DNA of 64,000 bases from Thalia democratica (lineage: Eukaryota): NCBI GenBank assembly GCA_965202585.1, contig OZ241830.1, positions 58,218,001 to 58,282,000 on the forward strand, read 5' to 3'. Under the pieces are notes generated by a model. That model saw nothing but the letters and a program-made list of their open reading frames with translations. It ran no database searches and was not told where the DNA came from. The translations under genes were made by a program, and so were the position numbers. This document shows, piece after piece, positions 8,401 to 37,600 of this stretch; the stretch's first letter is position 1, and every line of letters starts with the position of its first letter.

Positions 8401-11400
8401 TTTTAGTGTTAACCACAAAAAATTAAGTTTACACAACTACTATTTTTAAAAGTAAACAAGTAAAGTTTGTTGTAAAAAGTTTTTTAACTTTTGTTCCTAA
8501 TTCATGTTGCAATGCTTTGTTTCAACTATAAATTATAGAAAATGTTGCATTCTTAACGCAACCGTTGCTGGTTAATTTATTAGCAATATAAACTAAGTTC
8601 ATATTAGAAAAAATTAGAACTTAATATTTTTAAAGGGACATCAACCCCCATATCCCACAGTACATATCCACTGTCCCCTGGTACGTTGATCCCACGCAGA
8701 GAGCGTCACTCAAACACCAGCGCTGTCAGCCGGAGAAGGCCAAGCACTACAGCGGCAACAATGAGTGGTACAACAGGGGAATACCCAGTAACGCGAAAGT
8801 AGCCACCAAGTTTAGGAAGGGCGCGTGTGAGAACTGCGGCTCCATGGGCCACAAGAAGAAGGACTGCCTGGAAGTAAGTATTTTTTATCTATTAGACGTA
8901 TACTTGTTTTTTGATTGATTGCTTTTGGTCTGCTGTTTTGTTTTAGATTTAATTGTTTGATGTTTTTTGACATGTAATAAAATTTTTCAAATTCAATCTT
9001 ATCTACTAATTTATAGTTATACTTTTAGATTTTTAAATAAGCAGATTTGTATTAAAATAAGTAATACACCAACATTTTTTTTAATAAGTGTTTAAGTGAA
9101 ATGTGGTTTTTCTAGACTAAGATTGTTTATAAAAAAATGATTTCGTGAGAAGTGTTTAGTTTAAAACTTGTTTAAAGATTTTGTTGTAAGACATTGAAAT
9201 AATTGTACAACTGTTTTTACAAATCTCTGAATGCAAATACAATTTTAAAACTAACTGCAAGTTTTTGCTTTTAATTATATGAGTGCTGAGCCAACGTTTA
9301 AAACTGCTAAAAATATGTACAATTTTATTTATATGATTGCTATTTAGTCAAGAAAGTCAGTAATTTAGAAATTTTTTTAAATCAGATTTTTTTTTGTAAA
9401 GTTGTAATCTTTCTAACTATATGAATATAATAAATATAATTAAAAAACAAATTGTGCAGTAGTTATTCTTTCCATTAACAACCAACTTGAAGTGTGTTGA
9501 TTTGTTAACACACATAAACATATGTTGGTACAATAAAGGAAGATTACTGTACAATTTGTTTTTATTTATATTCCAGTGAAGTTACTTCACTAGGATCTTT
9601 TGTTAGCAAACGTTTTAACCTATATTTTTGAACAGTTATAATAAATATATGTTTTATGGTTGTTAGTAAATGTAAATTAGCTTTACATTTTTTTATAGTG
9701 AGCTTCTTCACACTTTTTTGACTTTATTATATAGATACGAACATTAAAATAAACTTTTCATATTAAGTTTTAAAATTTACTTCATTGTGTTTTTATTATA
9801 TTTTTACCAACTTTGTTTTATTTTTCACTTAAGTTTTACCAACCATCACTTAATAACTACTAATCTGTAAATTAGATGTTTTAAAATTTTGTATCAAAAA
9901 GCTTTGAACTTTTGAAGAGGGCAATGAATAATCCAACATGACTAATAGATTGTTACGTCATAATACTAAGTTTTTATGCAATTACTAGTTTCGCGCCGAA
10001 TTGACATTACTCTGAAGAAGACTTGGTGCATAAAAAACAATCAAGTCCGAAACACATGTCAAGTAATGTCTGTTTTATGTAGTATATATTTTTCTCTAGT
10101 TTGCCTACAGAGTAAAGGGCACTATAAACCAACTTTAAAACATAACATCATTTTATCTAATTTTTTATACTTTTAGTGTTAAATATCTTAAAACTAAAAA
10201 TATTATCAAAGTAGAAAAATGATTTTTTTTCTAAAACTAAATCCAAGTAGTGTTGTATAAAGTTCTAACTTCATTAAAAGCAAACTTTAATTTATATTGC
10301 ATGTCTCTTGTTTCAGTTTAATTTTTAATTAATTTTAAGTTTATTGTATATAATTTACCTGAATTTTTTTATGTTAGGAAGTGTACTGTTGTTATAAAGC
10401 TACTATGTGTAGGTTTTTGTTTGTTTTAATTTATCAAATTTTTTTGTTGTTTTATTGAAGTTTTCTTCAAAGATTGTTAATTTTCGTTGCTAACAAAACT
10501 ATTGCTTTGTGCTAAATGGTGATTTTTGTTTTAATATCATCTAAAATTTTTAGTAAATAAACATTGTTATTACAATTAGTAAAGGCCATAGGGGGTCCAA
10601 AATTTTTTTTTGGTTATGTATGAAAGCTGAAAGTATAATAAACTACAAGCCAGTTTTTATAGAATATAAAAATTTAATTAATTTCTAAAATAATTTTTTT
10701 TTGTAAAAGTTTCCAATACAAACATATAGACCGCAATTTTTTTCTCGGAAATTTATAAGTTTACCGAAATCTATATTCATTTTTTGAGCTGAAGACCTCA
10801 AATTTCTTGAAAAATTTCAATTACTTATAATTTAAAAGATTTTTAATGTTGCGATTTTAAATTTAAAAAATATAAAATTTTTAGCTAAATTAAAAAAAAA
10901 AATTTTTTTTTTTAACATTTCACTTTTATTAAAAAAAAACTCCTTTAAATCGATTTTAATAACAGCTATATGGACTTCCTGTGAAATTTCGAAGAAAATT
11001 GGTTAAAAAATTAAGAAGATAGACTTTTAGTGAAATAGTCTTTTTTCTCGTTTTTGGTTTGCGCCTTCCTTTTTTTCAAGTGGTTAAAAATGTCTGAAGG
11101 CTCAGATTAAACTCTACAAAATAAGATAAACTTGTAAAGGTCAAGGTGGATCCCCCTATGCCCTTAATCCTGTAGTTACATTTTTAGTCTGATTTTAGGT
11201 TATTTTAAACTTTAAAATAAAGTTATAAATCATCAGTGAAAAAATAAACTTAAACTATTATATAAGCTAAGGAAAATTAAATTTAGAACCATTGTGTTAA
11301 AAAAAGAATATTATTATATAAATAATAACAAAAAAAAAACCTCACAGAGACCGCGCAAAAAAGGCGCCAAATTCACCAACACCAACATCGCTCCCGACGA

Positions 11401-14400
11401 GCTCCAGCAACCAAATTTGAAGCTGGACTTCGAGGGGAAGCGGGACCGGTGGAACGGGTACGACCCCAACAACCACCAGGAAGTCATCGACGAGTACGCC
11501 AAGGTGGAGGTGGCCAAGCAGGTGGTGAAGGCGAACAAGTTGAACAAGGAGTTGCTCAGAGGGGAAATCACCGAAGATAAGGTTGGTTGATCTGTTTGTT
11601 CGTATTTTGAATTTGTTATTTTGGCTGTTGAATTTAGTTTTTATCTAAATTTCTAGAAGTTTATAAAATGATTCGGTTTTTAGTTTGATAATTTAAAAAG
11701 TGTAGTATAATTACTCTTTTTTTTTTTAAATCAAAAATTATAAATATTAAATTTAAAAATATAGAACAAACTTGATATTAAAATTTTAAGCTTTTCTTTG
11801 TTATAGTATTTTTTTCTTGGATTTTCTGAGTTTTTATGATTAAAAGTTGTTTAAGATAAAATAAGGACTTAAAAAAGAGATGGTTTACTCTGTTTTATTA
11901 GTTTACATTAACTTGTTTTACTGTTAGTAATATACATATGCAGAGCTATAGGGAGTAGATTCTAATAACACATTTGGTATGTAGTTAATTATAAAAAGAT
12001 TAAGTTTATGAATAAAATAAAGTAAGATGTCTACCAATTAGTATTAAAAAAGATCTTTCTATAAAAACTATCTTAGCTATCTGTAGCAGCCCCTAATGAA
12101 GTTTGTAGAGTCCCAACTGGTGCTGTAATAATAATGCATCTTGATAAGTAAAGCACAAAAAAGGATTACTATGAATAAATAAAATCAAATTTTTTTGAAG
12201 TAGCACTATATAAGGCTTTCCAAAAAACCTGGATTCCTTGAAAAACCTGGAGTTTGACAGTTTAGGCTAAAAATAATCTGGAGTTTGTGAAAGTTTGAAA
12301 AAAACTAAAAAAAAACCTAGAATTTTAACAACTTTTATATGTTAAATAGGAAATTTTCGATTTGACGCAAAAAATCTATCATATAGATAAAAAATTTGTC
12401 ATCATAATTTTTTTTATTAGAAATCACATTTAAAAAAGCTTTCAAATATTTTTTCAATTTTGACATAATATTTACCACAGTTTTTTACTTTAAACTTGAA
12501 TTTAAACTAAAAATAAACCCAAAAATGTGTACTTTTGAAAACCTGGAGAATATTTGCTAAAAAAATTTTGCAACCCTGTATATAATTTATAAAATAATTT
12601 TCAACATTCTAAACACTATGACGTCACACAGGCGCTGGACGACGACATGCAGGAGGACGAGGACAAGTACGCGGACAAGGTCGACATGCCGGGCACCAAC
12701 TTCGACAGCAAGCACCGCATCACAGTGAGGAACCTGAGGATCAGGGAGGACACCGCAAAGTACCTGAGGAACTTGGACTTGTCATCGGCTCACTACGACC
12801 CCAAGACCAGGTGCCTCGTTTGTTTTATGAATTTAAACTATACGCGAGTAAGCTAAAAATAGTAGAAAAAGTACACATTGCTTTAAAGTATGTTTTAAAC
12901 ATATTTTGGTAAAAACAAATAAAACTGTTTTACTACAAGTAGTTACAATATATTCGCTAAACTTAGCTCTAAGATACTTGTTTTCTTATTGTTTATTTGT
13001 CTTCGATTGTAGTTTAAGTCTAGTTTGTTTAACATTAAACCATCTTTTTCACTTACTTTGTTTTGTGCGAATAAAATAAGCAACATTACTATTATATAAT
13101 AAAAAATATGATTCTTTTTATCGAGCTCGCAGTTGACATTATCTTCTATACCCACATCTATCTGACCCTCAAGCACACTTTCACAGGACGATGCGCATGA
13201 ACCCGTACGAGATGCTGGGCAAGTCGGCGCACGAGCTGGAGTTCGCGGGCGACAACTTCGTGAGGTACACGGGCGACACGCAGGCGATGGCGAACACGCA
13301 GATGTTCGCGTGGCAGGCGGAGGAGAGGGGCCAGAACGTGCACCTGCAGTCGGATCCCACCAGGCTGGAGCTGCTGCAGAGAAATTTCAAAGGTGAAGTT
13401 TAGGTGTTTTGATAAAAATTTATGTGAGTTAGTTAACAATTAGTTTTTTAATATGTTAAAGATCTTGTAGATTAGTTGCGTATTAGAGATCTTTCAGAAC
13501 GCCAGAAAAATGCTTATAATGAGATAAAAAAATTACTGACTTATAATCTACTTATTATAAGAATTAATTTGTTGTTTGTTAAAAAAATTATGAAGTTTTA
13601 TACAATTGTTTGGTTGGCAACATATTTTAAGTCAATTGTGTAACCTCTAGTGCGATTTAGTTAAATTGAACTATAAAAAAATAGTCTATACTCAAATATT
13701 TTTTTAACATTTTTATAACAATGTTTTTCTAAATGTTACCGTAAATATTAGCTTTCTATTTTCTATAAAAACAACTAATTAAGATGGATTATTATTGCAG
13801 TATGTTTTTGATCCTTACAAATTCTAAAATATTTGTGGCTAATTTTTGTAAACTAACCTTTATGAGACTTAAAGTATTAATTAATTAATTAATAGATTAG
13901 TTATATATAAGTCTGTATTTTTCATAAAAGATCTGTGTTGCAAATTTTATAAATTCCTCATGGAAATACCCATCAATTCATTACAGTAATCTTCCTCTCG
14001 ACTACTATTTTTTGAGTTAATAAACTTTAAGTTTAAATTGCGATTTTTCATTTATACTGGTATTTCTTAGGTATGCACTTTTACGAGCAGTTTTTAAAAT
14101 TTAGAAAACTAAATATATAAATTAAAACAACACTCACCTAAACTACTTGAGATCATTGTAGTTGCTTTACTTAATTTTACTTTTTCAATCAATGCAAATA
14201 CTTCAAACAGGAGCCAAAACAAAATTGGAGGAGGAACGCAAAAACCTGCTGGTGGAAAAATACGGAGGAGTAGAATATTTGGAGGCTCCTCCCAAGCAAC
14301 TTTTGTTCGCGCAAACTGAAAATTACATCGAGTATTCCAGAAGTGGAAAAGTCATCAAAGGTTTGTTTCACTGAAAAGTCAATGTAAATTATTTTTAAAC

Positions 14401-16037
14401 TTACTATCAAACTGCTTGTAGAATAATGAACATATCAATGTTAATATTATATCAAAGTTTTGTTAATTGAATTATTTTATTAGAACTTTACTTCCTTAAA
14501 TTTTTGATTATTTTAGTATTTAGTTTAGTTCTTCAATAATTTATTGGCTATTATTTATTAGTTCGTTAATAGTAAAAAGCTATATACATATTCTAAAATA
14601 TAAAAACTATTTATTAAAACAACATTATAATTTTCAATTTTTTTTATATAAAAAAGGCATAATAAAATAAGAGTTAATTGTTTCAATATTTAAAATAAAG
14701 TAGAAAAATAAAACAAACCGAACATCAGGGCAGGAAAAAGCAGTGACGAAGAGCAAGTACAACGAGGATGTGAGGATAAACAACCACACCTGCTGCTGGG
14801 GAAGCTTCTGGAAGGAGGGGTTGTGGGGGTACAAGTGCTGCCAGTCCACCATTAAGATGTCCTACTGCGTCGGATTGAAGAACAAGGAGGAAGACAAGAC
14901 GGAAGAAAAAGAGGAGAACAAAGAGGCGACGTGGCAGCAGAAGGTCGGTTTGAACGAAGTTTCAGATAAGAACGTTGTTGATCGTGTTTATATTGACGAT
15001 GTGGAAAAGTCGCTCGTGGAGCAGCACAGGGAGAAGATGAGCAAGAAGGAGAAGAAGAAACACAAAAAGAGCAAAAAGAAGAAGAGCAAGAAAAGCAAGA
15101 AGAAGAAGAGGAAAAGGGAGAGTTCAAGCAGCGATTCATCTGAGTGGGTTTTAAACTAATATTTTGAAAAAAAAAATGTTTAAAAGTTTAACTTAAAGCT
15201 GTATCATTTGTTTATTGTACTGATGAGCTCTTTAGAGCGAAACTTCTTTTGCATTGGAAAATAACATAAAAAAATTACATTATAAAAGTTAACTATTAAT
15301 ATAAATTGCAGCAGCAATTCAGACGAAGAGCCAGCCTCGAAAAAATTAAAGAAAAATAAAAACGTGAATTTGGATGATATGAGCAAGGAAGAGAGAGACG
15401 AGCTTGTTAACAGAATAATGAAGAGAGAAAAAGCGAGACAGTAAGTTTGTTTTATGATTTATTTGTTATTTAAAGGTTAACATGAATACATAAATAAAGT
15501 ATAATATACAATTCACTTTTTTTTTACCAATTGTTGTTTAAATATATTAATATTTTGTTTAATTAAAAGTATCAATATTTAAATAAAAATTACAATTATA
15601 CCATTTGTTGTGATCTAATAGTTTAACTAATTCTAATTATTTTTTTAGACAACCTGTTTTTAAATACTTAGAATTAGACAAGTTTAACATCATTATTTTT
15701 ACACTCAATGTGCAGTACAGTATGTTTCTTAAATAGATGAGAAAAAGTTAGATTTTTATTATAAATAACTTTGAAAAAACTAAACAAAGTTCAAAATTTT
15801 AACTTTTTAAAAACCACTGTCATAGTTTATTACAAAAAATTATAACTTCCACATTCAACCACTTTTATCCACACCAGGAGACGAGTTGATATGATGAGCT
15901 CATTGGACGAGAGGGATCGTCCGTACAATTCGAACAGGGGAGACGCGGAAGCCGCCATGGAACCCACTGAAGCGGAAATGGAGGCGTACCGAAAAATGCA
16001 GAAGAACAAAGACGACCCCATGTACGGGCTGTGTTGA
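5445..16037 (+). CDS. SLU7: Pre-mRNA splicing factor SLU7, 9 or 10 coding exons
   Basis: Exons: 5445-5629, 8636-8873, 11348-11581, 12632-12810, 13187-13392, 14211-14360, 14729-15143 (possible internal 66-nt intron 14944-15009), 15312-15440, 15878-16037. All junctions are GT-AG with matching phase. The translation has SLU7 hallmarks: [31 protein letters not shown], zinc knuckle [61 protein letters not shown] and C-terminal [15 protein letters not shown]. Confidence 0.97.
7198..7348 (-). repeat. Intronic repeat containing a decayed hammerhead; inverted partner of 9484-9637
   Basis: Reverse-complement homology to 9484-9637, with a partial third copy at 7596-7650. The minus strand reads GTGTGTTGA-TTCG-TTGACACAC-A-GAAA-CATAT-GTT. 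Confidence 0.8.
9484..9637 (+). repeat. Inverted partner of 7198-7348
   Basis: Direct reverse-complement alignment across about 150 bp. Confidence 0.8.
10003..10070 (+). ncRNA. Type I hammerhead ribozyme motif, near intact, SLU7 intron 2, sense strand
   Basis: Stem I is GACATTACT/AGTAATGTC with one extra A. Core CTGAAGA at 10012-18. Stem II is GACTTGG/TCAAGTC with an A.C mismatch at the core-closing pair. GAAA at 10049-52, 2-bp stem III with palindrome ACATGT, and GTC triplet (cleavage after 10060). Confidence 0.72.
10584..11163. mobile_element. Kolobok-like non-autonomous DNA transposon
   Basis: TIRs GGCCATAGGGGG/CCCCCTATGCCC flanked by TAAA and TTAA. The body is homologous to 4420-5059. 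Confidence 0.65.
12212..12578. mobile_element. Probable hAT-like MITE in SLU7 intron 3
   Basis: Repeated aaaaacctgga motifs, and an end caaccctg typical of CAGGGTTG termini. Confidence 0.45.
15211..15270 (+). ncRNA. Hammerhead core with decayed stem III in the 168-nt SLU7 intron 15144-15311
   Basis: CTGATGA-GCTC-TTTA-GAGC-GAAAC at 15220-15243 is a textbook core plus stem II. Upstream TTTATTGTA partly pairs with TAACATAAA. The NUH triplet is lost. Confidence 0.55.
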
Positions 16038-19000: not shown

Positions 19001-19780
19001 AAAAATACTTATAGATGTTTATATTTTAGCAGGAAATAAAGTATTTAAAATGTAAGCTGAGATAACTGTTTTAAGCAAACTTATGTTAAAAAATCTTTTT
19101 TTTTTTTGAGGATTTCAAAGAAAAAATTCTTCTTTTTATGTTTGCAAATGTTGTTTTCTTTCTATTATTACAGTTAAGACTTAGACAAGTATTTAAAAAG
19201 AAAATTAAATGGAAAGAAATTTGTTGTTGTTAATATCATTGTTGTTAAAATTATTATTGTTTTTTTTTTATTAAAAGTATGAGTTTTACAGTACTTAGCT
19301 TCATATTTTCATTTATAAAAGTTAAGTTCAGTTATTGTAAAAATCACTTCTTTAAAACTCGTAAAAAGTTTTACAATAGTTTATTTAACTATTCAAATAT
19401 AATTTTTATTTATTTTTCAAGTTAAACTAATAAATAAAATAAAAATTACCTATTTAGCACAAAGTACTTTAAAAAAAAATTCGTAAAATCTTTCAGCGTA
19501 TAACATTTTACTTTCTTTAAAGAGGGTGTAACCTATAACACGTTTGCTATTAGTGTTGTTTATCTCCTTTTAAAATTTTATTTAAAGTTATATATACATT
19601 TTTTTTTCTTATGTTATTAAACAAAATTCATAGTACATTATTAAACACAAAATTCAGTTAATTTTCGTTCAGTTTTATTTTCTTTCATTTTTTAACTGAT
19701 TGTTTTATTAATAAAGATTTAAATATTTAAATGATAAGAAAAACAGTGTGTAATAGTTCGTAAGAAACTTTATAAGCATG

Positions 19781-19853
19781 TGGTGTACGACTCGATAACC
19801 GAAAGGTTCCTTTGTACACCAGGTCCTTAGATCAAACTTTTTGAGCGATTTTT
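19781..19853 (+). repeat. Dispersed short hairpin repeat, copy 1 of 4
   Basis: TGGTGTACGACTCGATAACCGAAAGGTTCC..GTACACCAGGTCC..TTTTGAGCG. Other copies at 36995-37080 (-), 43353-43438 (-) and 57769-57847 (+). Confidence 0.8.
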
Positions 19854-21417
19854 ATAGTATTTAAATGTACAAAGTTTATTGTAAAACTTTTTTTTTGAAT
19901 TTAAATTACGTATACTTTGCAAAAATGCTTTTAAAACTCAAACACAAGCCTACTTTTATCTTTTTTTACTATTTAATTCTAAATCTGTATTACTTGTTTG
20001 AAGTTTTGATACAGCTGTATAGAGCTTCACAACCTCTAAGCAATTGAGTTATAGATACAACTGTTAACTTAAAAAATATTTATCCCTACCTGCAAATGAT
20101 TGCAAAGCTGTATATAACACTACACAAATTTTCAAAACAAGCTGAAATAAAAAAAGATAATTGATACCAGTGGCGACTCGTAGTATTTTTGTTAGGGGCT
20201 GCAGGAAGTTTACAAGTATTTAAAATAACTATTAATTTAATTATTTTTAATTAATCTAATTGTTGTGCACTACAGCGGTTATTGGTCAAATTGTATATGA
20301 AATCAAATATTTAAAACAAACATATTGAAGTTTATTTATTTAACGAAAATAACAAACAGTGCAATTTAACTTTGTATTCCCCATGATTAAAGTATATGAA
20401 TAAAAAGTACTTGAAAAGTCATACAAACTTATATAATCTATAACAATGAACATTGCAATAAGCATTTAGCCTAAGTGACCTTTGATTGTGGTAAGTATGA
20501 TAAACACATATAATCAAAATAAGTAAAAATTAATCTTGTAAAATTAATAACATTGTTAAGCAATATTTCTTAAATCCACGACTGCCAATGTTTACTATGG
20601 AAACCACAATCTACTAAAAACATCACACTATTTCCTCCTTAACTGTTGTGTTTTCTACTAAGACAACCAGTTAAATGCAAAAATTGCTTAATAATAAGTA
20701 AGCAGGAGTAAAATTTTATATTCTAAACTATGTTTTTCATTGAAAACAATTTAATAAAAGCATTATCAATGTTTTCGAAGTAATTTTTTATTTAGTAATC
20801 ATTCATTTACAATGTATACTTTAAAAGTATAAGGAAAAACAAGATAGATAAAAAACTTTGTGGGTTAAATATAGATACAACTTAAAAAATACAAAATAAA
20901 CAGATACTAACACATAAATACTTATGTTAAATAAATACTTAAGACTTCTGGCAACAAATACGTTTTGTTTTACTATTATGTTGTGGGGGATTACGCTTTA
21001 ATAGTCGTCATCTGTAAATTTTAATGGCTTTAAACATGTTTGTACACTTAAAGTATATAATAAAAGACCAAAAATTTCTAGGTGCGCACTACCGGTTGGG
21101 TACATAGACTTGTGCTGAGTTCAAATTGCGTACCTAGGTGTCAGGCTACTGTACTTTTTAAGAAGCTGGCTTGTATTTATGTCGTACATATTAAAAACTT
21201 GTTCAGTTGTTCTTTTGAAATTCTAATGAACTATTTAGTTTTTAAAAGTAGTGAAATATATGTGAGAGTTGAACCGAACAATATTTAATTCGTATAATTA
21301 TTTATCTGCTGTAATAATCTAGTTTTATCAAAACACTCTTTGCTTTAGAAATTTTAAAATAAATAAAGCTCAAAAGTAAACCAATATTACATAAATTGCA
21401 TAAAAACACCCTAATAA

Positions 21418-21534
21418 CTTAATTTTACTTTTTCATTTAATGCAAACACTTCAAACAGGGGCCAAAAAAAAATTGGAGGAGGAACCATAAAATCTGCTGG
21501 TGGAAAAGTACGGAGAAGTGGAGTGTTTGGAGGC
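21418..21534 (+). pseudogene. Orphan duplicated fragment of the SLU7 intron 5/exon 6 junction
   Basis: Aligns to 14169-14286, covering the intron end (aattttactttttca..tgcaaa.acttcaaacag) plus about 76 nt of exon. There is an in-frame TAA in [25 protein letters not shown]. Confidence 0.85.
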
Positions 21535-25603: not shown

Positions 25604-28600
25604 TTAGTGCACGTAAGATTTTTCTGGAACAAAGTATTTCTGGTGAATAGGATTTCTCAATGTGATTAAAACTGGCTGATATAAATTTGAAATTTGATCG
25701 AACCTGTTTAGAAAAAAATATATATTTACTAAACTTCATATGTAAATGTCGATAAAATTTACTACTTATAAAGTTATAAAAATCTTTACGTGACATTTAA
25801 ATTAGCAGTTATAACTTTTTACTTTACTGAAATGTTTAACTAGGTACATTTGGATAAAAAATATTTGTGCAGTTTAGTAACTTATATCTTAATCCTTATT
25901 TATTTTATGATATCTTTCAAAAGAAAGATACTTTTTGATAATTAAACTAAACTTCAATGTTTTCCTACTATGTTATTTTTTAGATTATCTTTGACAAGAG
26001 CAGTTTAAGTTTAACTTATTTATAAAATAATAAGTTTAATGTGAACTTGTATATTTACATTTAAGTAGTAGTATAATAAGCTATTAATTATTATTAAAAA
26101 AACTTTGGTATTTATAAAGATACATATATATATATATATATATATATTCATTTATTATTATGACGGCTTATATACTTTAAAAACTATACATACTTTATTT
26201 GGTTACATTAAATACTTTATTTGTTAGCATAAAACTTATTAAAAAAAGATTCAATTAAAAACTTAACTCTATTTATATCTTAAACAATCAAAAACAATTT
26301 GCTTCATATTCTAAAATCTAAATAACCGATACTTTAAACCTAACAGCATATTAATGTTTTTAAATTAGAAAGAAAAAATAATTTTAATTGTTTTCAATTT
26401 ATTTAATTTAATTTTTATTCAACAATAGTACATTCATTTAAACAAAAAACTGTAAAAGTGTTCATCTATAGTTATAATAATTAGTTTTTATAAATATTTT
26501 GTTGATTCTGATACAACAAAAATAAAGTTTTTTGAATTTATACATCATAACTTTATATGACCTATAAAAATAATTTAGATGTATCAATTAATTCAAAGTT
26601 AAAATACTATCGTACTTAACTTATGTATGTAAATGAAATTTTAACAAATTTCCTAATAAAAAATTATTGTACCAAAGATGTTTTATATAGAATATATTTT
26701 TAAAATGTTTCATAACTAAAAAAAAGTCTGAAAAAATATATTAACTTCATTTAACAACATTGTATCTACTTCCTACGCGGTCCAAATCCTACAATTAAGT
26801 ATGGTAAGCTCTAGCTTACATAAGAATTACTCCGATGTTCTCTTTAAGTATTCTAATGTTAAAAAAAGAACGAACCTGTCGGTTTGTTCGCACTCCAGAG
26901 GGCACATGGACACGTGGGAAGGGTTGAGTATGAGCTTGTTGGTGAAGGGAGCATTCAAATCGGGGTAGTTTTCATCGATGTTCAGTCTGTACTCCACTGC
27001 CAGCTTGTTGCTTCTCCTCGGCCTCCGTGATGTGTGAGTTTCACCGAGCCTTCTGATCGCCTGCGTGGTTTGTTTGTTTTACAAAAGACAGACAAGACAG
27101 ATTATTTAATAAAATAAATATGCTTCGAGCAATTCTCATCAGTAGAGTACAAAGCTAACAAGAGATAAAAAAGTTTAATCTTTTTGTTAAAAAAAAAACT
27201 TATCTCTTGCAAACTTAATCTACTGATAAGTGTTTTTCGAAGTATATTTAGTTTATAAAAAAAAGATGTCTTGTTTATGTTATTATGTATTTAATATTTT
27301 GTTTATTATGACACTTGAGCACCAATTAATACTTTTATAGGTATTTAACTAAATTAAACTATTTAAATAATAGTTTAATTGAACTTGTACTATCCTTTGT
27401 TTATTCTTGTTAGTATTATTAGTTTAGAGTTTTAAATAGATCACTTATTAAGATTATCTAAAAGAAACAGTATATCGAAAAAAAGACTAAAGAAGTTAAA
27501 AAAAACAAGATAGTTTTATTTAACATATATCTATTTATCAACACGATATACCTTTTTTTTGAAACTGTAAAATTTGGTAACTTCTCTTTTTTTAAATATT
27601 AATGAAATTAGTGCTAATTATACAAAGAATTTAAACAATTAAGTTTTTTTTAAACTCAATCAAAATAAATTCTGAATAATATCTTTAAAAAATTAAACAA
27701 ATTGAAAACCAGATTTCAAATATAGGTTTCAACAACAAATTAAAAATCTCACAATATTTTGTGGAGTGTAGTAAGGTAGAGCAACAACTGTATTTTTGTC
27801 AGATTTTAATATGCTCAGTTTTGCCACTTTTTCACGCATCTTTTCATTTTCATCAGCTATTTCGCAGAAATAATTCAAAATCTAAAAAAAAATATATGAA
27901 AAAAATTAAGCACATAATTACTGTTGTTATTGTTTATTCTACTACAGTACAGCTAAATTTTCAAAAACTTCAGAAGAAGTTAATATTAGTCGATAAATAA
28001 TGATTACAACTAGTCGTTTCAATGTCTTAGAGAACTAGAACCTCTTTAGTGAAACCAACAAGTTGTATAAATCTTATGACTTATAAATTTTAGCTTGGTA
28101 TACTAATTTACTTCTTTGAAACTTCAACAAATAGTTATAATTTAATATAATAATAGATTATAGAGATTGTTTAAAAGACAACGTTTTTGACAGCAGACAA
28201 AAATTTCAAAAAGTGAAATAAAAAAATTTTCAGTACAAAAAGTACTTCTATCAAGTTTATTTTGTCATCGATTTTGTCTTGCCGAACAGCCAGCAAATCG
28301 AACCGTTTCAGTTTGTTCAGGTCTTTTGCGTCACCCAGCGGATTTTTCACGCGCAATTTTCCTTCGACTTTTTTACCTTTCTTGAGATCATTGACTGCTT
28401 TGTTGTAATGGGCCTTCGATTAAAACAACTGTTATAATCAGTACACGTTTTCTTAAAATCAGAAAACAGCTATTATAAATAATAAACATTTTCTACATTT
28501 TTAGCTTGAATTCACAAGCAACATAAACATTTTAAAACTTAGTGAAACTTATTATTATATAAGAAAAATAATTGTTGCGTATTGATAAAAACATACTTTA

Positions 28601-31600
28601 AACTGGTCTGTCCAAGTGCCAATCCAGCGTACAACCAAATTTCTCAGTTGATCTTTCACTTTTATTTCTGAACCTTCTTTTATTTTCCACAACTCCCAAG
28701 AATCCAAGTCTTTCGAAAGGTAAGAATGCTCATCCTAAAGTGATATCATCCTTAGTTTATGACAAGAATTTTTTTTTTGAATAAGTTAATAACTAATAAT
28801 AATTAAATTCAACAAAAAAAATAATTGCTTGTACATTCATGTATAAATTGGAACTACATCACATGTGTTCTTTCAAGTATGCCGAATCAAAAAGGGATTT
28901 TGAAAACAATAAAAAAGTTTATGATGTAAAAACTTATAAAAAGAAAATCAATTTTTAAGTCTTTTTTTTTATTACCAAGTGTTTAAAATTTTTACTTTGT
29001 ATAGACGTAAGAACTAGCAACAAAACTAGAATTTTAAGAAATATAAAAAACAAACTTCTAATCCAATTTCATTTAAAGTTTCGATGACAAAACTTTTGTG
29101 AAATTCGTTTCCTTGCAGGTAACTTGTCAGCAACTCAACCACCAGCTGTTTGGGTTTTTTGCCGTCGACAACAGTTCTGTACAGTTTGAATGCCGCTTCT
29201 AAAAACTCACACTCTTTAGCAACCTGAGTCAGTATTACAAAAAGTTTACTCAACGTATTCAACTTAAAAAATCATCTTTAATGGTGGAATTCAAAAAAAA
29301 AAACTATGATTGTGTTATCCTACTGAAAAAAAAAACAATTTACGTTAGACTGCGCTGAAGAAATCATTTCAATCAAGGTTGATTCCAAAATTTGAGGGCA
29401 ATCTTCAAGATGTTGTTTGTACCAGAGAGAACGGAGCGCCTGGCAGATTTGCCTTCGTTCCCCCCAATCTTTTAAAGCGGCAAGTTGCGAGGTTATAGCT
29501 TCGAAGAATTTCATTGCAGTATAAGGGGGTTGCATATTCTAGTAATATTTATTAAATGTCAATTTAAAAAAAAATCACAAATTAAGAAAATATCTACTTT
29601 CTATTTAAAGTAATTGTGACACTCAGTCATTATTTAAATATAAAAATAATCATAAAGTCAGCTTCAGTTGAATATAAAAATATTGACTTTCTTAATGTCT
29701 CGCTTGTGGTGCAAATACCACGATTGATCTTCGAACATCTTCAAAAATTCGGGCTCCTCAGTTTTTTCGACAATTTTACTTATAGACTTTCTAGGCACCG
29801 GTCTGGGCGGCAACTTTTTAACTTGATGCTTGAGTTGCGACTTTCTTACGTTTGGAAGTGGCGGCGCGACTGGTTGATCTTGAGTGAGTTTAAGTTTATA
29901 AATTTAAATCACAAAAAAACAAAAAGCTAACAAAGTTAAACATAGTTATGGTAAGACCTTAACATTTAACATTAACGTCGTAAAGCTATTTCATAAGCAT
30001 GATTATTTTAATTGACTGAAAAGAGCAACTTACAACGACCAAAATTCTAACACGTTAAAAAATCACTTCCACAACAACCTTGCTGTTCCTCTTCAACGTG
30101 TTTCACGGCAGAAGGCTGCGGAGAGTTCTTCACGTTGCTGATCGCTTCCATCAGTTTGTTTTTGAGCGAGCTCCCGTCTTCTTCGTTGTCCGTCGCCTGG
30201 GATGAGTTCTGACTGACGTGGGAGCCCGTCGGACTCCCAGTGCGTTTCAAACCGGCTGCAATGTACAAAATAAAAAGTTTTCAAAATTAAAAACGTGTAC
30301 AAAAATTTAAAAAAGCAATGTTTCGGAGGTCACTTCACTGGATGAAAGTGAAAAATCGGTAGAACAAAAACAACGATAGATAAACATATACTTTTTTTAA
30401 TAATGAAGTTGAAAACAAATAAATGTGTTATGCAACCTGAAGGATTCATAGAAGTATCAACAGTAGACAGCAGTTGCATGCCTCTTAGTACTCGTAAGTT
30501 TTTTTCGTGACTGGTATATTCCGATATCTTTTAAAAATAGGAATATAAAACTTAAATTAAACAAATACATATGTATACTACAGATTGCTTAACAAAAAAG
30601 GTTATTAATGCTTAAATTTTATCAAAATTGCAAGAAAATAAACTTCAAAAATGAAACTTGAAAAAATATTTTTGTGTTTACTTTTAATTTATTGTTTAAG
30701 ATAAACTTTAAAAACAGGAGAAATGTTACAAAAGTTTTCAAATATTTCAAAACTTATTGGAAAAAGTAAGTTTCTCACAATAGTTTAATCTGAAACGTTT
30801 TAATTTACTTTAAACATATTAAGTTATTGGCGTATATTTGTAATTCTCAATCTAACAATTACTACTCAAACAGGGAAACTTTCGAAATGTTCACAATAAA
30901 CAATCTTACTGATTCGCTGATAATGTGCACGGAGTCTACATTCTTTTCGAATTGTTCTTTTTGCGCTTCGAAACACTGCTGAGGCCACAGGAGCCTCACG
31001 AGTATCGAGTTGGGAATGTAAGATCTCGGGTGAAGTAGGTAGCCTTTCTTCTCCACATCCGGGCCACTTTCTAATCGATTTTCTTTCTGTTTGAAAGTAT
31101 AAAAAGCGTTTCAAATGTATACTTTCCACACTCGTTATTGAAAAAATACAAATCATTGTTTGTCAGCTTTAAATTGTTCAATTTTTTCTAATTTTTTTTA
31201 ATTTAAAGTTTAGCTCTAAGATATCAATAACACAACTGAAATAGTCTGGCAAAGTAAAAGTAGAAGTATATACAAATAAAAATAAAAGAGATCATCGGAA
31301 CTTATAACTTTCTATGCGCAGTTTTCTGATTTTTCGGGATAATTAAATGTTAAAAAGTATGTTGGAAAACAAAATCTAAAATGAATAGTTTGTTCAGCTG
31401 ATTAGGTCTTTTAACATAACTTTTGTTAAATGGGTCATTACAGATTTTCGAAAACAAAAACTTCTTAAATGGAAAAAAATAAAGTAATCATACAACGTAT
31501 AATTTACAAGTATTCAACTCTGCTTAGTTTGTTGTCTAGAAGAAATTTATAACTTTGAAAATTATTTTAAATACCATATATCTTTGATCGAATGGAATCA

Positions 31601-34600
31601 TTTCTAAAATACCCTCAACACAATATAATTTTTTTTTAATTGGGTAAAGACTACTAAATTAAAAAAAAACAAATAAAATAAATCAATAACCCAAGTGTTT
31701 TCTTCCAGCATATCTTGTAATGGCTTAGCTGACTTCACGGAAGGGAAAAACCCATGACGTTTGTCTGATCCTTTGTATCTTTGTTTAGGACCTGAATAGG
31801 AACAAGCGTTGATTTATAAGTCTTGTAACATTTAACTTTGGGTTGTTTAATTTTTAATAAATAAATTCGTTTATTTAATATAAAGATTGTGATACTAAAA
31901 AAAAATTAAATAAGTTTTAGTCACAAGTATTTAAAATGACTTTTTTTATAATAAATTATCAAAAGTTCAACTAAAAATCTTTAAAGAGCGCTTAACCGTA
32001 AAACTGTACTTAACTTTAAGTTTCAAGAGTGCTAAATGAAGCTAATCAAAAAAGTACATTGAACAATTTAAACAAAAAGTATATACAAAAGAACCAAATA
32101 TGTAAAAACGAACTTTGCGGCTTTTCCTTGGGTGGGTTCGGATTACTTTCAAACAAATTAGCAGCACTCTCTTGGCTTTCAACCTGAAACAAAATATTTT
32201 CATTAAACTGAAACACAAATATTTTTTAAAATCTTATTAACCATCAAACAAACCTTATGCACGGGGCGATGGTGCCAGAGGTCCATGTACTTTTTGAACA
32301 CCCGAGACCTCACCTTGGTCCTCGCCTTCCTCTGCGACCGCTTCGACGTGATCACCCCGTCCCTCAGGTCGACTATCTCCTGCTCCCTCGTCCTGATCTT
32401 CGCCATCTGCTCCTCCTTGCACTCCTGGTCCCACGACTTCTCCATCGAGCCGAACTCGAACGAGTAGCTGGTCAAGTTTACAATAAAAGTAAAAAAAACT
32501 GAAAAGAAACTCGTATACCTAACAGCTAATGGTTTTAATTTTTAGAACAAAAGTAACTTTCTGTACTAAAAAACTTTCGTAGCTGTATTTTGCAAACTCA
32601 ACTTTCAGACAAACTTCTTAAAATTATTTTCAAATACGCAACCAAAAAATTATCTTTAGTTAATTCTTTAAAATAAACTTTTTGTAGCCGGACTTGCAGT
32701 ACGCAAAATAAAAATTTCAAGACACTTGATTACCGTGAAAATTATTAATATTTTTCCAATTCAAACTGAATTATTGAAAACAGTTCACACTTTTTGTAGC
32801 TGGACTTGGCCACGATCAGCTTGTCCTTGTGCTTGTCGGGCAAACTCTCGTACAAGACCCTGTTCCTCGCGAACTCGTACTCCTTATTCTGCCGCCGCAC
32901 ATCTATGCAGGCCAACTTGAGTGCGTAGATGAGCGGCAGGTACGAGCTTCCTTTTATCAGGTGGATGTTCCCTTCCAATCCCACCAGGATGTCTCCTCGC
33001 TCGTTGCAGAAGCAGATGCTGTGCGGCGCTCCGTTCAGTTTCAGCTTCCTGGTTTAAAGAAAAAAAAAAATTTTTCATTGGCATGGTGAGTTTTTGTTGC
33101 TAAAGTAAAAACTGGGTTTAAAATTAGTATGAAGCAAAATATGTATAACAATAAGAGCTCAAAAAACATGAAATAAAAAAAACTATTGACAAACTTAATG
33201 CAATTAACATTTTGGAAATAGTCATGAAATAAAAACAGAAATCTTTTAAAAAATCAAACAACCTAATCAGACAGTTTTCTTCATTCCAAATATGTATGGA
33301 CCCGTCCTTGCTGCAAGTGGCGACCAGGTTCAACTTTTTCAAGCAGGAAATTCCGGTGAGCTCGTTCGTGTGATCGAAATCAGGCTCGTGATCGAACCTG
33401 GCTGTTGTGCAAATATTGTTTTTACAAGTATTATAAATGTAATAATATTAAAATAAAGTAGTATAAATTTAGTGAATAATATTAAAATGCTGTTTTTATG
33501 AATATAATTAATATGTTTTTAACTTTTTGATTTTGCAAACTGTTCTAGAATCAAATACAACTAATCTGGTTTAAGACAACATTGATAGTCATGTTTTATT
33601 TTTTAGTCTCTGACCATAAGGTTATGTAAACGCTAAAAAACAAATTTAAAATGAGACAGCATGCTTTTTTTTTGTATTAAGCATTATGCAAATGCAATTC
33701 CTTTGAAGATACACTGAGGATTTGCAATTTAGCTTGTTTATTAAGTTAAAGTCGCTATAGCATTAAACAAAAAATTAAAATGATATGGATTGTTTTGGTT
33801 TTTAACCACTGATAAGAAAACTAATGTAAATGAGAAATGGCGTAGATGAATGAAGTTTAAATAGCATGCTTTTTATTTTTGAAAATAATTTGTTTGATGA
33901 TAATCTATTGATATTACGATTTTTGCCACAATTTTCATATAAAAAAGTATCAAGTACAAATTAACACTATAAATGTTATTACTTGTGATATTTGTTTGCT
34001 TAAGTTTGGCTCTTCAAGACTTATTAAATACCCAACCACGTTATCTAAAATTGTACTTAGCTTGACTGGTAAAAACATTTCAGTTTCTTTTACTTTAAAG
34101 AATAAGAGTAAGCTAAGTAAAGTAATAAATAAAGTTAGAACCACTAAGCTGTAGTTGAACGTTAACTAAGCCTGATCTGAACTATTCTTTAAAATTCATT
34201 TTGTTGTCAAAGTGCTTCTTGTTACAAAAAGAAGAAAAGTAGTATGACCAAAATTATTTTTAATACTTAAGATTAACAGCAGTAATTAAAGTATTACAAA
34301 ATATCCATTAAAAAACCTTTATTTTTCATGTTGTAGTGAACGGTGGTGAAGGTGGCATTTTCTTCCTGTTGAAAGCCGACGATTAGAATGTCATGCGAGG
34401 TAACAGCGACCCTAGTGGCCACTTGTGCGCAGAAGAACGTGGTAAAAAGGTCGAAGGGCTCGACCCTGGTGTTCGGGTAAACCTTCCACACTTTGACCAA
34501 CTTGTCTGTTGAAATTTGAATAAAGGTTAAACAGTTTATCTAAAAATACCCGTTTTAAGGTGTACATTTTATACGTTTTATGTCTTAAAATAAACTGTTT

Positions 34601-37600
34601 TTTACAAGCAACTGGTATTTATAAAGTAAAAATTTTGAAGTTTTCAAGTAAAAAAACAATGCAATACAAATTTAACAACTTTTTACAATAAAAAATAATT
34701 CTAGAAAAAAAATATTAAATACTTTAACAGTTTTTATAAAACTTTATAAAAGTAGCATGAGTTTTATACAACCACGGTCCAACCTGCTCCAGACGTTATG
34801 ATTTCTTTGCTTCTGACGTTGGAAACGATTTTAACTATCTTGGAAGTGTGGGACTGCACGCTGTACTGCACGCTACCCGTGTTTAAATCGAGAACCACTA
34901 TGTTCCCACTTTCAGTGCCGCCTATCAGCAGTATCGAGTAACCGTACCTGTTGCATAAAACGTTAGTTTTTTTAAAGAAAATATGTAAGACTTTGCACTT
35001 GAAAAGTCTATGTATAAGTTTGATAAATAAAAAAATTGAGAATTTAGTGCATTATAAATAGCGCAACTATAGTATAATTCAACCTAGTTTTTCAATAATT
35101 AAACATACTTATTTAGGACGTGAAGTATTATTTTTTTAACAAAAAACACTTGCACTCACGAAAGTTTTTTTACGATGTGTTAAAGTACCAGAAGGACTCT
35201 AAATATTAAAGTATAGAGTCGAAAGATAAAAAAAAATCTAAAAAGTATTGAACGAAGACCTAACTTAAAAAAAAGAGCAAGCTGATTTCTAAAATCAATT
35301 TAAAACTCTAACTTGAATTTTCTCTTAATGTCTTCGTTTTTAACACCCAGCCTAATTTGATTCCAGGTATCATTCAACTCAGCTTCATCTACTATGTTCT
35401 CGTAAAGCTCCAAACAGGTAAGTTTTTCATCTAAAACATTAAATAATTAATGTAAATATTTGTTTTTTTTCAGTCAACATCAGTTGTCGCTTTGTATAAA
35501 AACAAGCATATGCTTGTGGTAAAAAATTTCAAATTTTTTTACAATTAAAAAAGTAAATGAATTATAATACAGAGACAAAAAATTGTATCATTAGAAAAAT
35601 AAATTATGACTGATGAACAAAGCATATGAGTAAGCTATCTTCCGACAGAACTTTTTTTTTTGATTATATAAAATTCAATTTAAAACAGGCAATAAGGCAT
35701 AGTCTTAAAACTTGACTGCATACTATCTATAAAAAAATCTATACTTATTGTGTAAACAAACAATAGTTTACATTCGCTTCAGATTTAAAGCCTTCAAGTC
35801 ATCATCAGACTAACCTAAACTTTTTGTCTTAGGAAAACTTGAAGCATAAAACTTTTAGTTCGGAAAATATTGTTAATATTTGTTAATATTTGTTTACACT
35901 ATGCACATATGTCGCTTTACTTTATTTATTAAGCATAGATAACTACCAACCAAGCTTAAAACACACTATCGAATAAAACACTTTATACGTGGATGATTAG
36001 CAGCTAATTAGTAACAGAAACTATACTTTATTTTGACGAAAAATTGAAGTGTAAAAATTTAAGTCCGAAACATATGAAAACAATTGTTTTGTTTCTACCA
36101 CAAAAACAAAGTATACATCACTTTAAACCAAATTTAAATAAAAGAACATAACATCTAATAAAAGTTTTACGTACAAAAAATCAGAAACCAATAAGCAACA
36201 GAAACCTCCATCAAATTTGAAAAGAAACTCGACGCCGGCAGGGCTCTTCAGCGTGCTGGCCCGATAAAGCCCCCCGTCACCGTAAACAGCATAAATCGAT
36301 TCCAGTGGCAGGCAGTAGACTGCGTCGACGATCTCGTTGTCATCACAACCGGCTTTCTGATCGCAAGGTGGCAGCATCGTGGTGAGTATGGTGCCGTCTA
36401 GCGGAGAAACGAGTCGCACCGATCCGTCGTTTCCGCAACACAAAACTCGGTCGACCAACTGAAAAGGATTTAGAAATTTTTGTTGTTTTTTTTGATAAAG
36501 ACAAAAACAAGTATAATAAGCAGCTTTTTTCAAGTACTATTATACATTAGCTTTTATTACTTAGAACTGTTTCGTATTGATTCAAATTTATTACATGTGA
36601 CAAAAGTTAAATAATTTATGCACAAAGGTTTAATTTATTTGTAAATACAGTTGTAAAAAAAAAACAGCAAAGTATTTATCAATAAAAACTATCGAAGTAT
36701 TTACATTTCTATATTCGTACATTTCCATTTTTTTCACTGAATAACTGTGAAAAAAAATTTATTGTATATGTGTTATTAATTTAGCACAGAGAAACGTGCG
36801 TAAATTCAATAAATCAAGTAATTTTCAAGATGTTGTTATTGCTTTATTCCAACGAGCTTGTTTTTCGCATCTTTATTATAAAGTTTATTATAAGTTGGTA
36901 AATTTTGAACATTTATTAGCAAGATTTAAGTCTAAAAATTTGCAAAAAAATTTTTGAACTAATATTAATAAGAAAATTAACTATATTGTTTATTAAACGA
37001 CAAAAAAAAATACGCTCAAAAGGTTTGGTCCAAGGACCTGGTGTACAAAAAAAACCTTTCGGTTATCGAGTCATACACCAGAACAGTTTAACGTCATGCC
37101 CAGGACATATAATCAACTCTTTTCTCTAATTACCCAATCGTAGTAAAAATTTGATGAAGATGCGTGACTTTCCATATGTCAACAAATTTGCTGGAGTAAG
37201 TAAAAAGTTTGTTGCTGTCAGAACTTGCGTACAATCCCAACAACTTGTCATCTGCTTCTATTCTATTAATTATGCTTTGTTATTAGAAAACTGCGAAAAA
37301 AACTTACTTCAACACGTAAATAGAAAATCACAGAAATTTTTGGCGCGTTATAGCCTTTTTAAGATAATGTAAGGATTATAAGCATAAAATTGAAAGATTA
37401 AGAAAAAAAATGCAAAGTGATTTATTTCAAAACCAAAACTTTAAAATCAAACTCACAAGTCAACCTCGTCAGAACTTTCTAAACTCCAAACTCTGATAGT
37501 TTTATCATAAGATGCAGACATTATGTATGGACCCTAGCAAAAAACTATATCTATTAAACTTTGTTATTTTACGCAGAAAATGTAAGTTTTTTTGAAAACG

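What the first reader, a model, noticed from the sequence alone, without database searches (positions are those of the whole stretch)
8636..36458. Extreme exon-specific GC3 islands within single genes
Hand counts: SLU7 exon 13187-13392 has 64 of 68 codons ending in G/C, and WDR97 exon 32254-32467 has 66 of 71. In contrast, WDR97 exon 40548-40703 has 11 of 52, and the C8orf34 exons are mostly AT-rich. The islands are CpG-rich, mid-gene, end close to the splice sites, and sit in very AT-rich introns. Translational selection cannot easily vary exon by exon, so a chromatin-linked mutation/repair bias, GC-biased gene conversion or composition-based exon definition is implied.
Basis: partly seen in the sequence, partly recalled or inferred. 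Interest (0 to 1): 0.7.

Follow-up and report, generated by a model that had tools for sequence, protein, structure and literature searches.

The report
Exon-by-exon GC3 mosaic, salp genes
In this very AT-rich genome, probably of a salp, neighbouring coding pieces of one gene differ from about 20% to 94% G/C at silent codon positions while the spacers stay at 23%, and the G/C-rich state is actively kept, which makes it a clean natural test of what shapes silent sites.

Summary
All three hand counts are exact (64/68, 66/71, 11/52). RNA contigs confirm the SLU7 splice junctions from exon 3 to exon 7. GC3 across its nine exons runs .31 .76 .83 .93 .94 .46 .73 .47 .65 (heterogeneity p = 8e-21).

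- **Edges and introns:** non-exonic GC is flat at .23, and GC falls to background within about 20 bp of the splice sites.
- **Not a chimera:** independent ocean-metagenome contigs of relatives carry the same exons in AT-rich introns.
- **Not local:** runs of 12 period-3 G/C positions occur 235,977 times genome-wide (20-80 expected). Earlier scan notes report the same mosaic on other DNA of this genome.
- **Third-position specific:** AGA to AGG shifts, but AGR:CGN does not, and amino-acid make-up is unchanged.
- **G and C interchangeable:** half of the silent changes in exon 4 against a distant relative are G/C swaps.
- **Actively kept:** exons with GC3 of .9 or more differ at 2% of third positions from a lineage whose introns differ by 8%.

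Best reading: selection for G/C at silent exon sites against strong AT mutation pressure, perhaps for exon recognition. Simple gBGC and repair bias fit poorly. Why particular exons escape is unexplained.

The parts
5445..5629 (+). SLU7 exon 1 (coding part, start codon); GC3 .31
   Evidence: Open frame joined to exon 2, consensus donor GTAAGT. AT3-rich 5' exon.
8636..8873 (+). SLU7 exon 2; GC3 .76
Evidence: Frame continuity and AG/GTAAGT borders.
11348..11581 (+). SLU7 exon 3; GC3 .83
   Evidence: RNA contig joint 11581/12632; Pfam Slu7 E = 6e-14.
12632..12810 (+). SLU7 exon 4; GC3 .93
   Evidence: RNA joints on both sides. 0/59 third positions differ from the lineage whose introns differ by 8%. 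GC3 is .94 and .92 in two relatives.
13187..13392 (+). SLU7 exon 5; GC3 .94 (64/68 full codons)
   Evidence: Count confirmed; RNA joints; Pfam Slu7 E = 8e-20. 2/69 third positions differ from the relative L020, whose introns differ by 7.9%.
14211..14360 (+). SLU7 exon 6; GC3 .46, an AT3 exon between two islands
   Evidence: RNA joints. The protein is well conserved here, with .44 identity to homologues. GC3 is .51-.52 in the relative.
14729..15143 (+). SLU7 exon 7; GC3 .73, with an internal AT3 dip near 14940-15005
   Evidence: RNA joint at the 5' side and RNA contigs reaching 15143. The dip is kept in two relatives although the peptide there has changed.
15312..15440 (+). SLU7 exon 8; GC3 .47
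   Evidence: RNA joint 15440/15878; the frame closes only with this acceptor.
15878..16037 (+). SLU7 exon 9 coding part; GC3 .65. GC drops to .15-.3 right after the stop codon
   Evidence: This is the only verified case where the enrichment ends at the stop codon and not at the end of the exon.
32254..32467 (-). Exon of the WD-repeat gene on the minus strand; GC3 .93 (66/71)
   Evidence: Count confirmed and AG/GT borders. Orthologous frames at 88-91% identity in two metagenome contigs. In L024, 2/70 third-position differences against 7/141 at positions 1 and 2.
32782..33048 (-). Neighbouring exon of the same gene model; GC3 .81
   Evidence: Splice-chain model. Orthologue in L024 with GC3 .77 (68 of 88 third positions G/C); 7/88 third positions differ.
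33302..36458 (-). Upstream exons of the gene model (33302-33401, 34317-34505, 34784-34947, 36229-36458); GC3 .75, .66, .57, .63, rising toward the .93 peak
   Evidence: Borders are predicted only.
26872..30255 (-). Downstream exons of the gene model (30079-30255, 29688-29878, 28246-28413, 26872-27060); GC3 .67, .49, .48, .70
   Evidence: Borders are predicted only.
40548..40703 (-). AT3 exon-like frame; GC3 .21 (11/52)
   Evidence: Count confirmed, AG and GTATGT borders. That it belongs to the same gene as 32254-32467 was not shown.

Best explanation
**What is shown**
- The genome is under a strong AT mutation pressure, which sets all non-coding DNA to about 23% GC.
- Against this, silent third codon positions in many exons are held at G or C by a fixation bias.
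- The bias stops at the exon borders, treats G and C alike, and differs from exon to exon.
- The observed GC3 values, taken with the 23% GC of introns as the mutational equilibrium, imply a population-scaled strength from about 1 (GC3 near .46) to about 4 (GC3 near .93).
- Each exon's state is stable across related lineages.

**What is inferred**
- The bias is most likely natural selection on the G+C content of the exon itself, working at the DNA or pre-mRNA level.
- A plausible purpose is to mark exons for recognition among long, very AT-rich introns.

**What remains unknown**
- Why some exons of the same mRNA escape: 5' exons, SLU7 exons 6 and 8, and the dip in exon 7.
For: **Confined to exons**
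- Non-exonic GC is .231 against .234 in the GC3-rich and AT3 parts of the window.
- Flanks of GC3-rich and GC3-poor exons are alike beyond about 20 bp.
- GC falls right after the SLU7 stop codon.

**Third-position specific**
- AGA:AGG is 4:23 in rich exons and 11:0 in poor exons, yet AGR:CGN is 27:13 against 11:6 (p = 1).
- TTR:CTN is 14:27 against 14:16.
- GC1, GC2 and the Gly/Ala/Arg/Pro share are unchanged.

**G and C equivalent**
- Fourfold sites show G 95 to C 68.
- 5 of 10 silent changes in exon 4 against L029 are G/C swaps, while GC3 stays at .92.

**Actively kept**
- Exons with GC3 of .9 or more show 4/198 third-position differences, against 247/3067 in introns of the same lineage.
- The neutral expectation for such G/C-rich sites is about 17% (for the two exons tested, 4 differences against about 23 expected, Poisson p = 1e-6).
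- In exon 32254-32467, silent sites are more conserved than positions 1 and 2.

**Stable states**
- Orthologous exons keep their GC3 in relatives, including the dip inside exon 7.

**Link to gene architecture**
- A relative whose SLU7 introns are mostly about 50 bp has GC3 of .19-.38 in all exons.
- Among the eight SLU7 donors, a weaker consensus goes with higher GC3 (rho = -.72, p = .045; five of the eight borders are RNA-validated).
- GC contrast between exons and introns is a known aid to splicing (PMC3638135, PMC8997360).
Against: - If the target were exon G+C as such, synonymous first positions of Arg and Leu should shift too. They do not, or only weakly, which looks frame-aware.
- GC3 does not follow flanking intron length.
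- GC3 follows exon length only in this window (rho .57, p = .013) and not in 16 exons from random loci.
- AT3 exons such as SLU7 exon 6 are spliced normally, so high GC3 is not required for splicing.
- No splicing, nucleosome or expression data were available.
- The donor-strength link rests on 8 sites. It could equally be a few bases of G/C pressure leaking into the intron.
Confidence: 0.45

Rival explanations
1. GC-biased gene conversion is confined to exons. Recombination heteroduplex forms mainly in the conserved exons, and the polymorphic, indel-rich introns act as barriers to conversion tracts. Stable local hotspots then push only exon sites toward G/C.
For: - The force treats G and C alike.
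- It does not follow protein conservation.
- It affects a probably weakly expressed WD-repeat gene as strongly as SLU7.
- GC3 rises and falls smoothly over several neighbouring exons in both genes.57 .66 .75 .81 .93, and .31 .76 .83 .93 .94.
- Introns differ by about 8% with indels between lineages.
- An intron barrier to conversion tracts has been proposed for plants (PMC4684703).
Against: - A bias of scaled strength about 4 would have to vanish within 10-20 bp of the splice site.
- Intron GC is identical in the GC3-rich and AT3 domains.
- Synonymous first positions of Arg and Leu, GC1, GC2 and amino-acid make-up do not move.
- 5' exons are the AT-richest. This is the opposite of promoter-centred hotspots (inference from established knowledge, not tested here).
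Confidence: 0.2
2. Classical selection for translationally optimal, mostly G/C-ending codons operates here. Its efficacy varies locally through linkage interference and local recombination rate, or through unequal use of exons in the main isoform.
For: - The effect is restricted to third positions. AGG rather than CGG is the favoured Arg codon and TTG persists, as expected if particular codons matter.
- The enrichment ends at the SLU7 stop codon.
- Introns are untouched.
- Silent sites are under constraint.
Against: - Exons of one mRNA differ from .46 to .94, with the switch at exon junctions.
- There is no excess of G/C-ending codons at conserved residues within exons.
- Both G- and C-ending codons are used in each fourfold family, and they swap freely between relatives.
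- A gene that is probably weakly expressed reaches GC3 of .93; its expression was not measured.
Confidence: 0.15
3. A chromatin-linked mutation or repair bias is at work. Nucleosome-covered or H3K36me3-marked exons suffer fewer C-to-T and G-to-T changes in a lineage reported to lack several base-excision-repair genes, so they settle at a higher GC.
For: - Thaliaceans are reported to lack SMUG1, MUTYH and MPG (PMC13746493).
- The islands are roughly nucleosome-sized (179-267 bp), and the 415-bp exon shows two G/C-rich blocks separated by about 60 bp.
- 5' exons are AT-rich, as would fit a mark that rises along gene bodies (inference).
- Exon length correlates with GC3 in this window.
Against: - Chromatin marks are not sharp to 10-20 bp, yet the flanks are at background.
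- The effect is limited to third positions.
- It ends at the stop codon.
- Reaching GC3 of .93 by mutation alone needs roughly a 45-fold local change in the mutation ratio (my calculation from the GC values).
- The length effect is not seen in the random-locus exons.
Confidence: 0.08
4. The pattern is an artefact: the GC-rich exons are assembly chimeras or contaminant sequence.
For: None found.
Against: - A 5.6-kb DNA contig of one run, and shorter contigs of a second organism, span the exon/intron borders.
- Five independent ocean-metagenome contigs carry the same exons inside AT-rich introns.
- Spliced RNA contigs join the exons.
Confidence: 0.01

Closest known systems
Differential exon-intron GC architecture of genes with long, GC-poor introns (Amit et al. 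2012, cited from memory; Gelfman et al. 2013, PMC3638135)
   Same: Exons are much richer in G+C than their long AT-rich introns. The contrast is thought to help mark exons for recognition.
   Different: - Here the contrast is far larger: third positions up to 94% against 23% in introns.
- It sits almost wholly at silent sites.
- It varies about threefold between exons of one gene.
- Nucleosome occupancy and any effect on splicing were not tested here.
Intron-delimited step changes of GC3 along plant genes (Ressayre et al. 2015, PMC4684703)
   Same: GC3 changes in steps at introns and not as a smooth gradient. That paper discusses an intron barrier to conversion tracts and stabilising selection on exon GC.
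   Different: - In plants the pattern is ordered by exon rank, with high outer exons and a U shape or a 5'-3' decrease, and differences up to about 15% in Arabidopsis.
- In plants, intron GC and amino-acid make-up shift as well.
- Here 5' exons are the lowest, the profile is a hump with drop-outs, introns are flat and amino acids do not shift.
GC3 heterogeneity driven by gBGC in mammals, birds and Hymenoptera (PMC5576983, PMC11960461)
   Same: GC3 spans a wide range within one genome, and the force treats G and C alike.
   Different: In those groups GC3 tracks intron GC of the same gene closely (rho above .7 in most tetrapods and Hymenoptera; PMC11960461). Here intron GC does not vary at all.
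Published description of thaliacean base composition (PMC13746493)
   Same: It reports 25.3% genomic GC for Thalia democratica, a coding GC almost 17 points higher, and a broad GC3 distribution. This matches the present genome (801.8 Mb; window 26% GC).
   Different: That analysis is per gene, the word 'exon' does not occur in the text, and the authors leave the mechanism open. Identifying the species of this window from that match is my inference.

Membership tests
Differential exon-intron GC architecture | Exon GC clearly above the GC of both flanking introns | tested here: met
   Rich exons have GC .47-.63 against flanks of .17-.33.
Differential exon-intron GC architecture | Higher nucleosome occupancy on exons, and a role of the contrast in exon recognition | not testable with these tools
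   No chromatin or splicing-reporter data. There are only indirect hints: the donor strength link and the relative with mostly tiny SLU7 introns and no islands.
Intron-delimited GC3 step gradients (plants) | GC3 changes stepwise at intron positions | tested here: met
   GC3 goes .94 to .46 to .73 across two RNA-validated junctions. One change also lies inside exon 7.
Intron-delimited GC3 step gradients (plants) | Regular dependence on exon rank, with parallel shifts in intron GC and amino-acid composition | tested here: not met
   The profile is a hump with drop-outs. Intron GC is flat, and GC1, GC2 and the Gly/Ala/Arg/Pro share are unchanged.
gBGC-driven GC3 variation | GC3 covaries with the GC of adjacent non-coding DNA | tested here: not met
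gBGC-driven GC3 variation | All freely evolving sites shift toward G/C, including synonymous first positions | tested here: not met
   AGR:CGN is 27:13 against 11:6, and TTR:CTN is 14:27 against 14:16. The sample is small.
gBGC-driven GC3 variation | Association with local recombination | not testable with these tools
   No recombination map is available.
Translational selection on optimal codons | One specific favoured codon per family, kept between relatives | tested here: inconclusive
   Both G- and C-ending codons are common, and 5 of 10 silent changes are G/C swaps. AGG over CGG does look codon-specific.
Translational selection on optimal codons | Bias is a property of the whole mRNA and stronger at conserved residues | tested here: not met
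   Exons of one mRNA differ (p = 8e-21). Within-exon correlations with conservation run from -.18 to +.17, none significant.
Translational selection on optimal codons | Bias rises with expression level and matches tRNA supply | not tested
   No usable expression data or tRNA census.

The most novel reading that the evidence does not exclude
Exon G+C at silent sites is itself a selected, heritable identity signal of exons in this 23%-GC, long-intron genome. It is set exon by exon, is in places stronger than selection on the protein, and has discrete high and low states that persist across species. If so, a large share of 'silent' sites in an animal genome would be held by selection for a non-translational code, with strengths measurable exon by exon.
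Probability: 0.3. Interest if true: 0.8.

Novelty: new variant of a known kind. Interest (0 to 1): 0.6.

Why it matters
Whether silent-site composition in animals reflects selection, biased gene conversion or mutation is a long-running dispute. It is hard to settle because exon and intron GC usually move together.

Here they are uncoupled. Introns sit at one value, while third positions of neighbouring exons span almost the whole possible range, and the high state is demonstrably maintained. Population data from this one species could therefore separate the three causes site class by site class.

There are also practical consequences. Gene finders and codon-based tests (dN/dS, codon adaptation) will misbehave on these genomes. 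In one exon studied here, silent sites are more conserved than replacement sites.

Tried and rejected
- **Genome-wide exon sample via Pfam kinase matches:** Genome-wide evidence therefore rests on pattern counts and 18 random 10-kb stretches.
- **Pattern searches:** The spacing control (38,410 hits) is inflated by telomere repeats, so the sixfold excess is a lower bound.
- **Residue conservation as the determinant of GC3:** no within-exon correlation.
- **The copy of the exon 6 junction at 21.4 kb as the reason for exon 6's low GC3:** AT/GC differences between the copies are balanced at 5:4, read by eye from the alignment. Rejected.
- **Flanking intron length:** no relation. **Exon length:** weak and not replicated.
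- **G/C leak into introns**, as reported by another scan note: not significant here apart from the 60 bp upstream of exon 5.
- **Scan for further terminal exons, to test whether the enrichment stops at stop codons:** only SLU7 was usable, as most hits were antisense frames.
- **Search of 1.84 billion representative proteins:** confirmed SLU7 but gave no close relative.
- **Rfam scan of the window:** no match at gathering scores.
- **Polarised changes in exon 7:** GC-to-AT 8 against AT-to-GC 2, too few to tell decay from segregating mildly harmful variants.
- **Gene model of the minus-strand gene:** it comes from my own simple splice-chain script, and several small exons in it are doubtful.


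Full report
**1. The observation**

The window is 26% G+C. In 1-kb steps it lies at .20-.26 except where exons occur.

I solved the SLU7 gene completely. Spliced contigs from two ocean metatranscriptome runs give the junctions 11581/12632, 12810/13187, 13392/14211, 14360/14729 and 15440/15878. The other borders follow from frame continuity and consensus sites. The nine exons join into an open 631-codon frame, and three of the exons hit Pfam Slu7.

GC3 per exon is .31 .76 .83 .93 .94 .46 .73 .47 .65. Heterogeneity gives chi2 = 113, p = 8e-21. The neighbours exon 5 and exon 6 differ at p = 4e-9. The switch coincides with exon junctions, but the 415-bp exon 7 also has an internal dip of about 20 AT-ending codons.

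For the minus-strand gene I have only my own splice-chain model. Its confident exons rise .57.66.75.81.93 toward 32254-32467 and then fall to about .5-.7. The names WDR97 and C8orf34 were not verified.

**2. Edges and surroundings**

Averaged over the five rich SLU7 exons, GC is .54-.64 in the first 20 exon bases. It is .12-.28 from 20 to 50 bp upstream of the acceptor. On the donor side it passes from .54 to .24 within 20 bp.

Across 20 exons, flanks of GC3-rich and GC3-poor exons do not differ beyond about 20 bp. With exons masked, GC is .231 between 5.6 and 36.5 kb, where exons are GC3-rich. It is .234 between 36.5 and 58 kb, where they are AT3. After the SLU7 stop codon GC is .15-.3 at once.

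CpG is not depleted in the islands: o/e is .86 with 6.4 CpG per 100 bp, against 1.1 per 100 bp outside exons.

**3. Not an artefact and not local**

A 5.6-kb DNA contig of one run and shorter contigs of a second organism cross the exon/intron borders. Five independent ocean-metagenome contigs of related lineages hold the same exons within AT-rich introns.

Genome-wide, twelve consecutive G/C at period 3 occur 235,977 times in 801.8 Mb, against 20-80 expected from base composition. The first hundred hits lie at about 30 separate places in 1.2 Mb of another chromosome and read like coding sequence. A control with the same number of G/C positions and nearly the same span (33 against 34 bases), but irregular spacing, gives 38,410 hits, many of them telomere repeats.

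The window has 145 such hits, 7.7 times the genome mean. Eighteen random 10-kb stretches have 10 in all. Sixteen of the 17 confident exons in those stretches have GC3 of .57-.78. So exons are generally G/C-enriched at silent sites, and this window holds the upper tail.

Earlier notes of this scan report the same mosaic at many other places of this genome. I treat those as leads only.

**4. What kind of force**

(a) *It acts on third positions only.* In exons with GC3 of .73 or more, AGA:AGG is 4:23; in exons at .57 or less it is 11:0. Yet AGR:CGN is 27:13 against 11:6, and TTR:CTN is 14:27 against 14:16. GC1 (.47 against .48), GC2 (.34 against .27) and the share of Gly/Ala/Arg/Pro (.19 against .18) barely move.

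(b) *G and C are equivalent.* Fourfold sites in rich exons carry G 95 and C 68, on both genes although they lie on opposite strands. Between the window and a more distant relative (L029, introns no longer alignable), 10 of 50 comparable codons of exon 4 differ silently. Five of those differences are G/C swaps, while GC3 stays at .92.

(c) *It ignores protein constraint.* Within exons, G/C-ending codons are no more frequent at conserved residues (rho from -.18 to +.17). The well-conserved exon 6 is AT3.

(d) *It is active now.* Against a lineage whose introns differ by 8.1% (247/3067), third positions differ as follows:

| Exon | GC3 | Third-position differences |
|---|---|---|
| Exon 4 | .93 | 0/59 |
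| Exon 5 | .94 | 2/69 |
| 32254-32467 | .93 | 2/70 |
| 32782-33048 | .81 | 7/88 |
| Exon 7 | .73 | 16/138 |
| Exon 6 | .46 | 3/50 |

Because G/C sites mutate more often under AT pressure, neutral third positions at GC3 of .93 should differ by about 17%. For exon 5 and 32254-32467 together that means about 23 changes expected and 4 seen (p = 1e-6); exon 4 adds 0/59. In exon 32254-32467, positions 1 and 2 changed more often (7/141) than position 3 (2/70).

I then applied a simple mutation-fixation balance, taking intron GC as the mutational equilibrium. It gives scaled strengths of about 3.8, 2.3 and 1.0 for GC3 of .93, .75 and .46. The predicted divergences are 2.9%, 6.7% and 9.2%, against observed 2.0%, 10.2% and 4.4%. 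This is my own calculation and is consistent within the small counts.

(e) *States are stable.* Orthologous exons keep their values: exon 4 .93/.94/.92, exon 5 .94/.91, exon 6 .46/.51, exon 7 .73/.76/.70. The dip inside exon 7 stays at the same place although the peptide there has diverged.

(f) *One relative lacks it.* A relative with 57-76% protein identity, whose SLU7 introns are mostly about 50 bp, has GC3 of .19-.38 in every exon.

**5. Reading**

A regional mutation or repair bias, or ordinary gBGC, should also raise the adjacent intron and the synonymous first positions. Neither happens. Classical translational selection does not explain exon-wise switches within one mRNA, the free G/C swaps, or the lack of a link to conserved residues.

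The remaining simple reading is selection for G/C at silent sites of the exon as a unit. This would be a DNA or pre-mRNA property such as exon marking among long AT-rich introns. Three things fit that:
- the known GC-contrast architecture (PMC3638135, PMC8997360);
- the relative without islands;
- the weak negative link between donor strength and GC3 (rho = -.72, p = .045, n = 8).

It does not explain why Arg and Leu first positions stay put, nor which exons are chosen. I give it .45. gBGC with introns as barriers, an idea raised for plants in PMC4684703, keeps .2.

**6. Organism and literature**

Earlier notes call the animal a pelagic tunicate. Genome size (801.8 Mb) and GC match the published figures for the salp Thalia democratica: 790.7 Mb, 25.3% GC, coding GC almost 17 points higher, broad GC3 distribution (PMC13746493). 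This identification is an inference.

That paper works per gene, never uses the word 'exon', and leaves the cause open. The first salp genome paper does not treat composition (PMC5174732). I found no description of the exon-level mosaic in the library.

**7. Limits**

- Only one read-laying run and 183 kb of extra genome sequence were available.
- The minus-strand gene model is approximate.
- Codon counts for the Arg and Leu tests are small.
- The relatives are unnamed metagenome contigs.

Noticed in passing
window 14169-14286 and 21417-21534: A 118-bp piece spans the last ~42 bp of SLU7 intron 5 and the first ~76 bp of exon 6. It is copied at 88% identity 7.3 kb downstream, beyond the end of the gene. 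These are the only two copies in the genome.
   Followed up: partly
window 12184-12675 (SLU7 intron 3): Summed contig depth here is 60,000-460,000, against about 85-100 for the flanks, in both DNA runs. There are many variable joints and loose ends. This is a very high-copy short repeat, and it is also present in the RNA libraries.
   Followed up: no
L027:300-2620 and L028:1-1340: Ocean-metagenome contigs carry a compact SLU7 gene with most introns about 40-56 bp (one about 590 bp), exons 3-5 fused, and GC3 of only .19-.38. Protein identity to the window is 57-76%. This is probably a small-genome relative.
   Followed up: partly
window 59150-60720: Open frames of a retroelement, with a weak hit to the integrase core domain (rve, E = 7e-4). 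G+C is .36 and GC3 .24-.46. It is richer than the background but has no period-3 signal.
   Followed up: no
L009:97-1205: A 1.1-kb open frame of Ser/Thr/Glu/Asp/Gly-rich repeats has GC3 of only .09. This is the opposite extreme to the islands.
   Followed up: no
G000:C8 about 12.3-17.8 Mb and 53.5-53.8 Mb: Dozens of protein-kinase domains lie in single open frames (intronless) in tandem arrays. They would be a natural test of whether GC3 islands need introns, but no DNA could be fetched.
   Followed up: no
G000:C1:79-772: The chromosome-scale contig starts with CCCTAA telomere repeats, some variant units among them.
   Followed up: no
window 10003-10070 and 50720-51640: Other first-stage notes place hammerhead ribozymes here. 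My Rfam scan of the whole window at gathering scores returned no family at all.
   Followed up: partly
window 32254-32467: Against the lineage whose introns differ by 8%, this exon has more changes at codon positions 1 and 2 (7/141) than at position 3 (2/70). Standard dN/dS tests would wrongly call this positive selection.
   Followed up: partly
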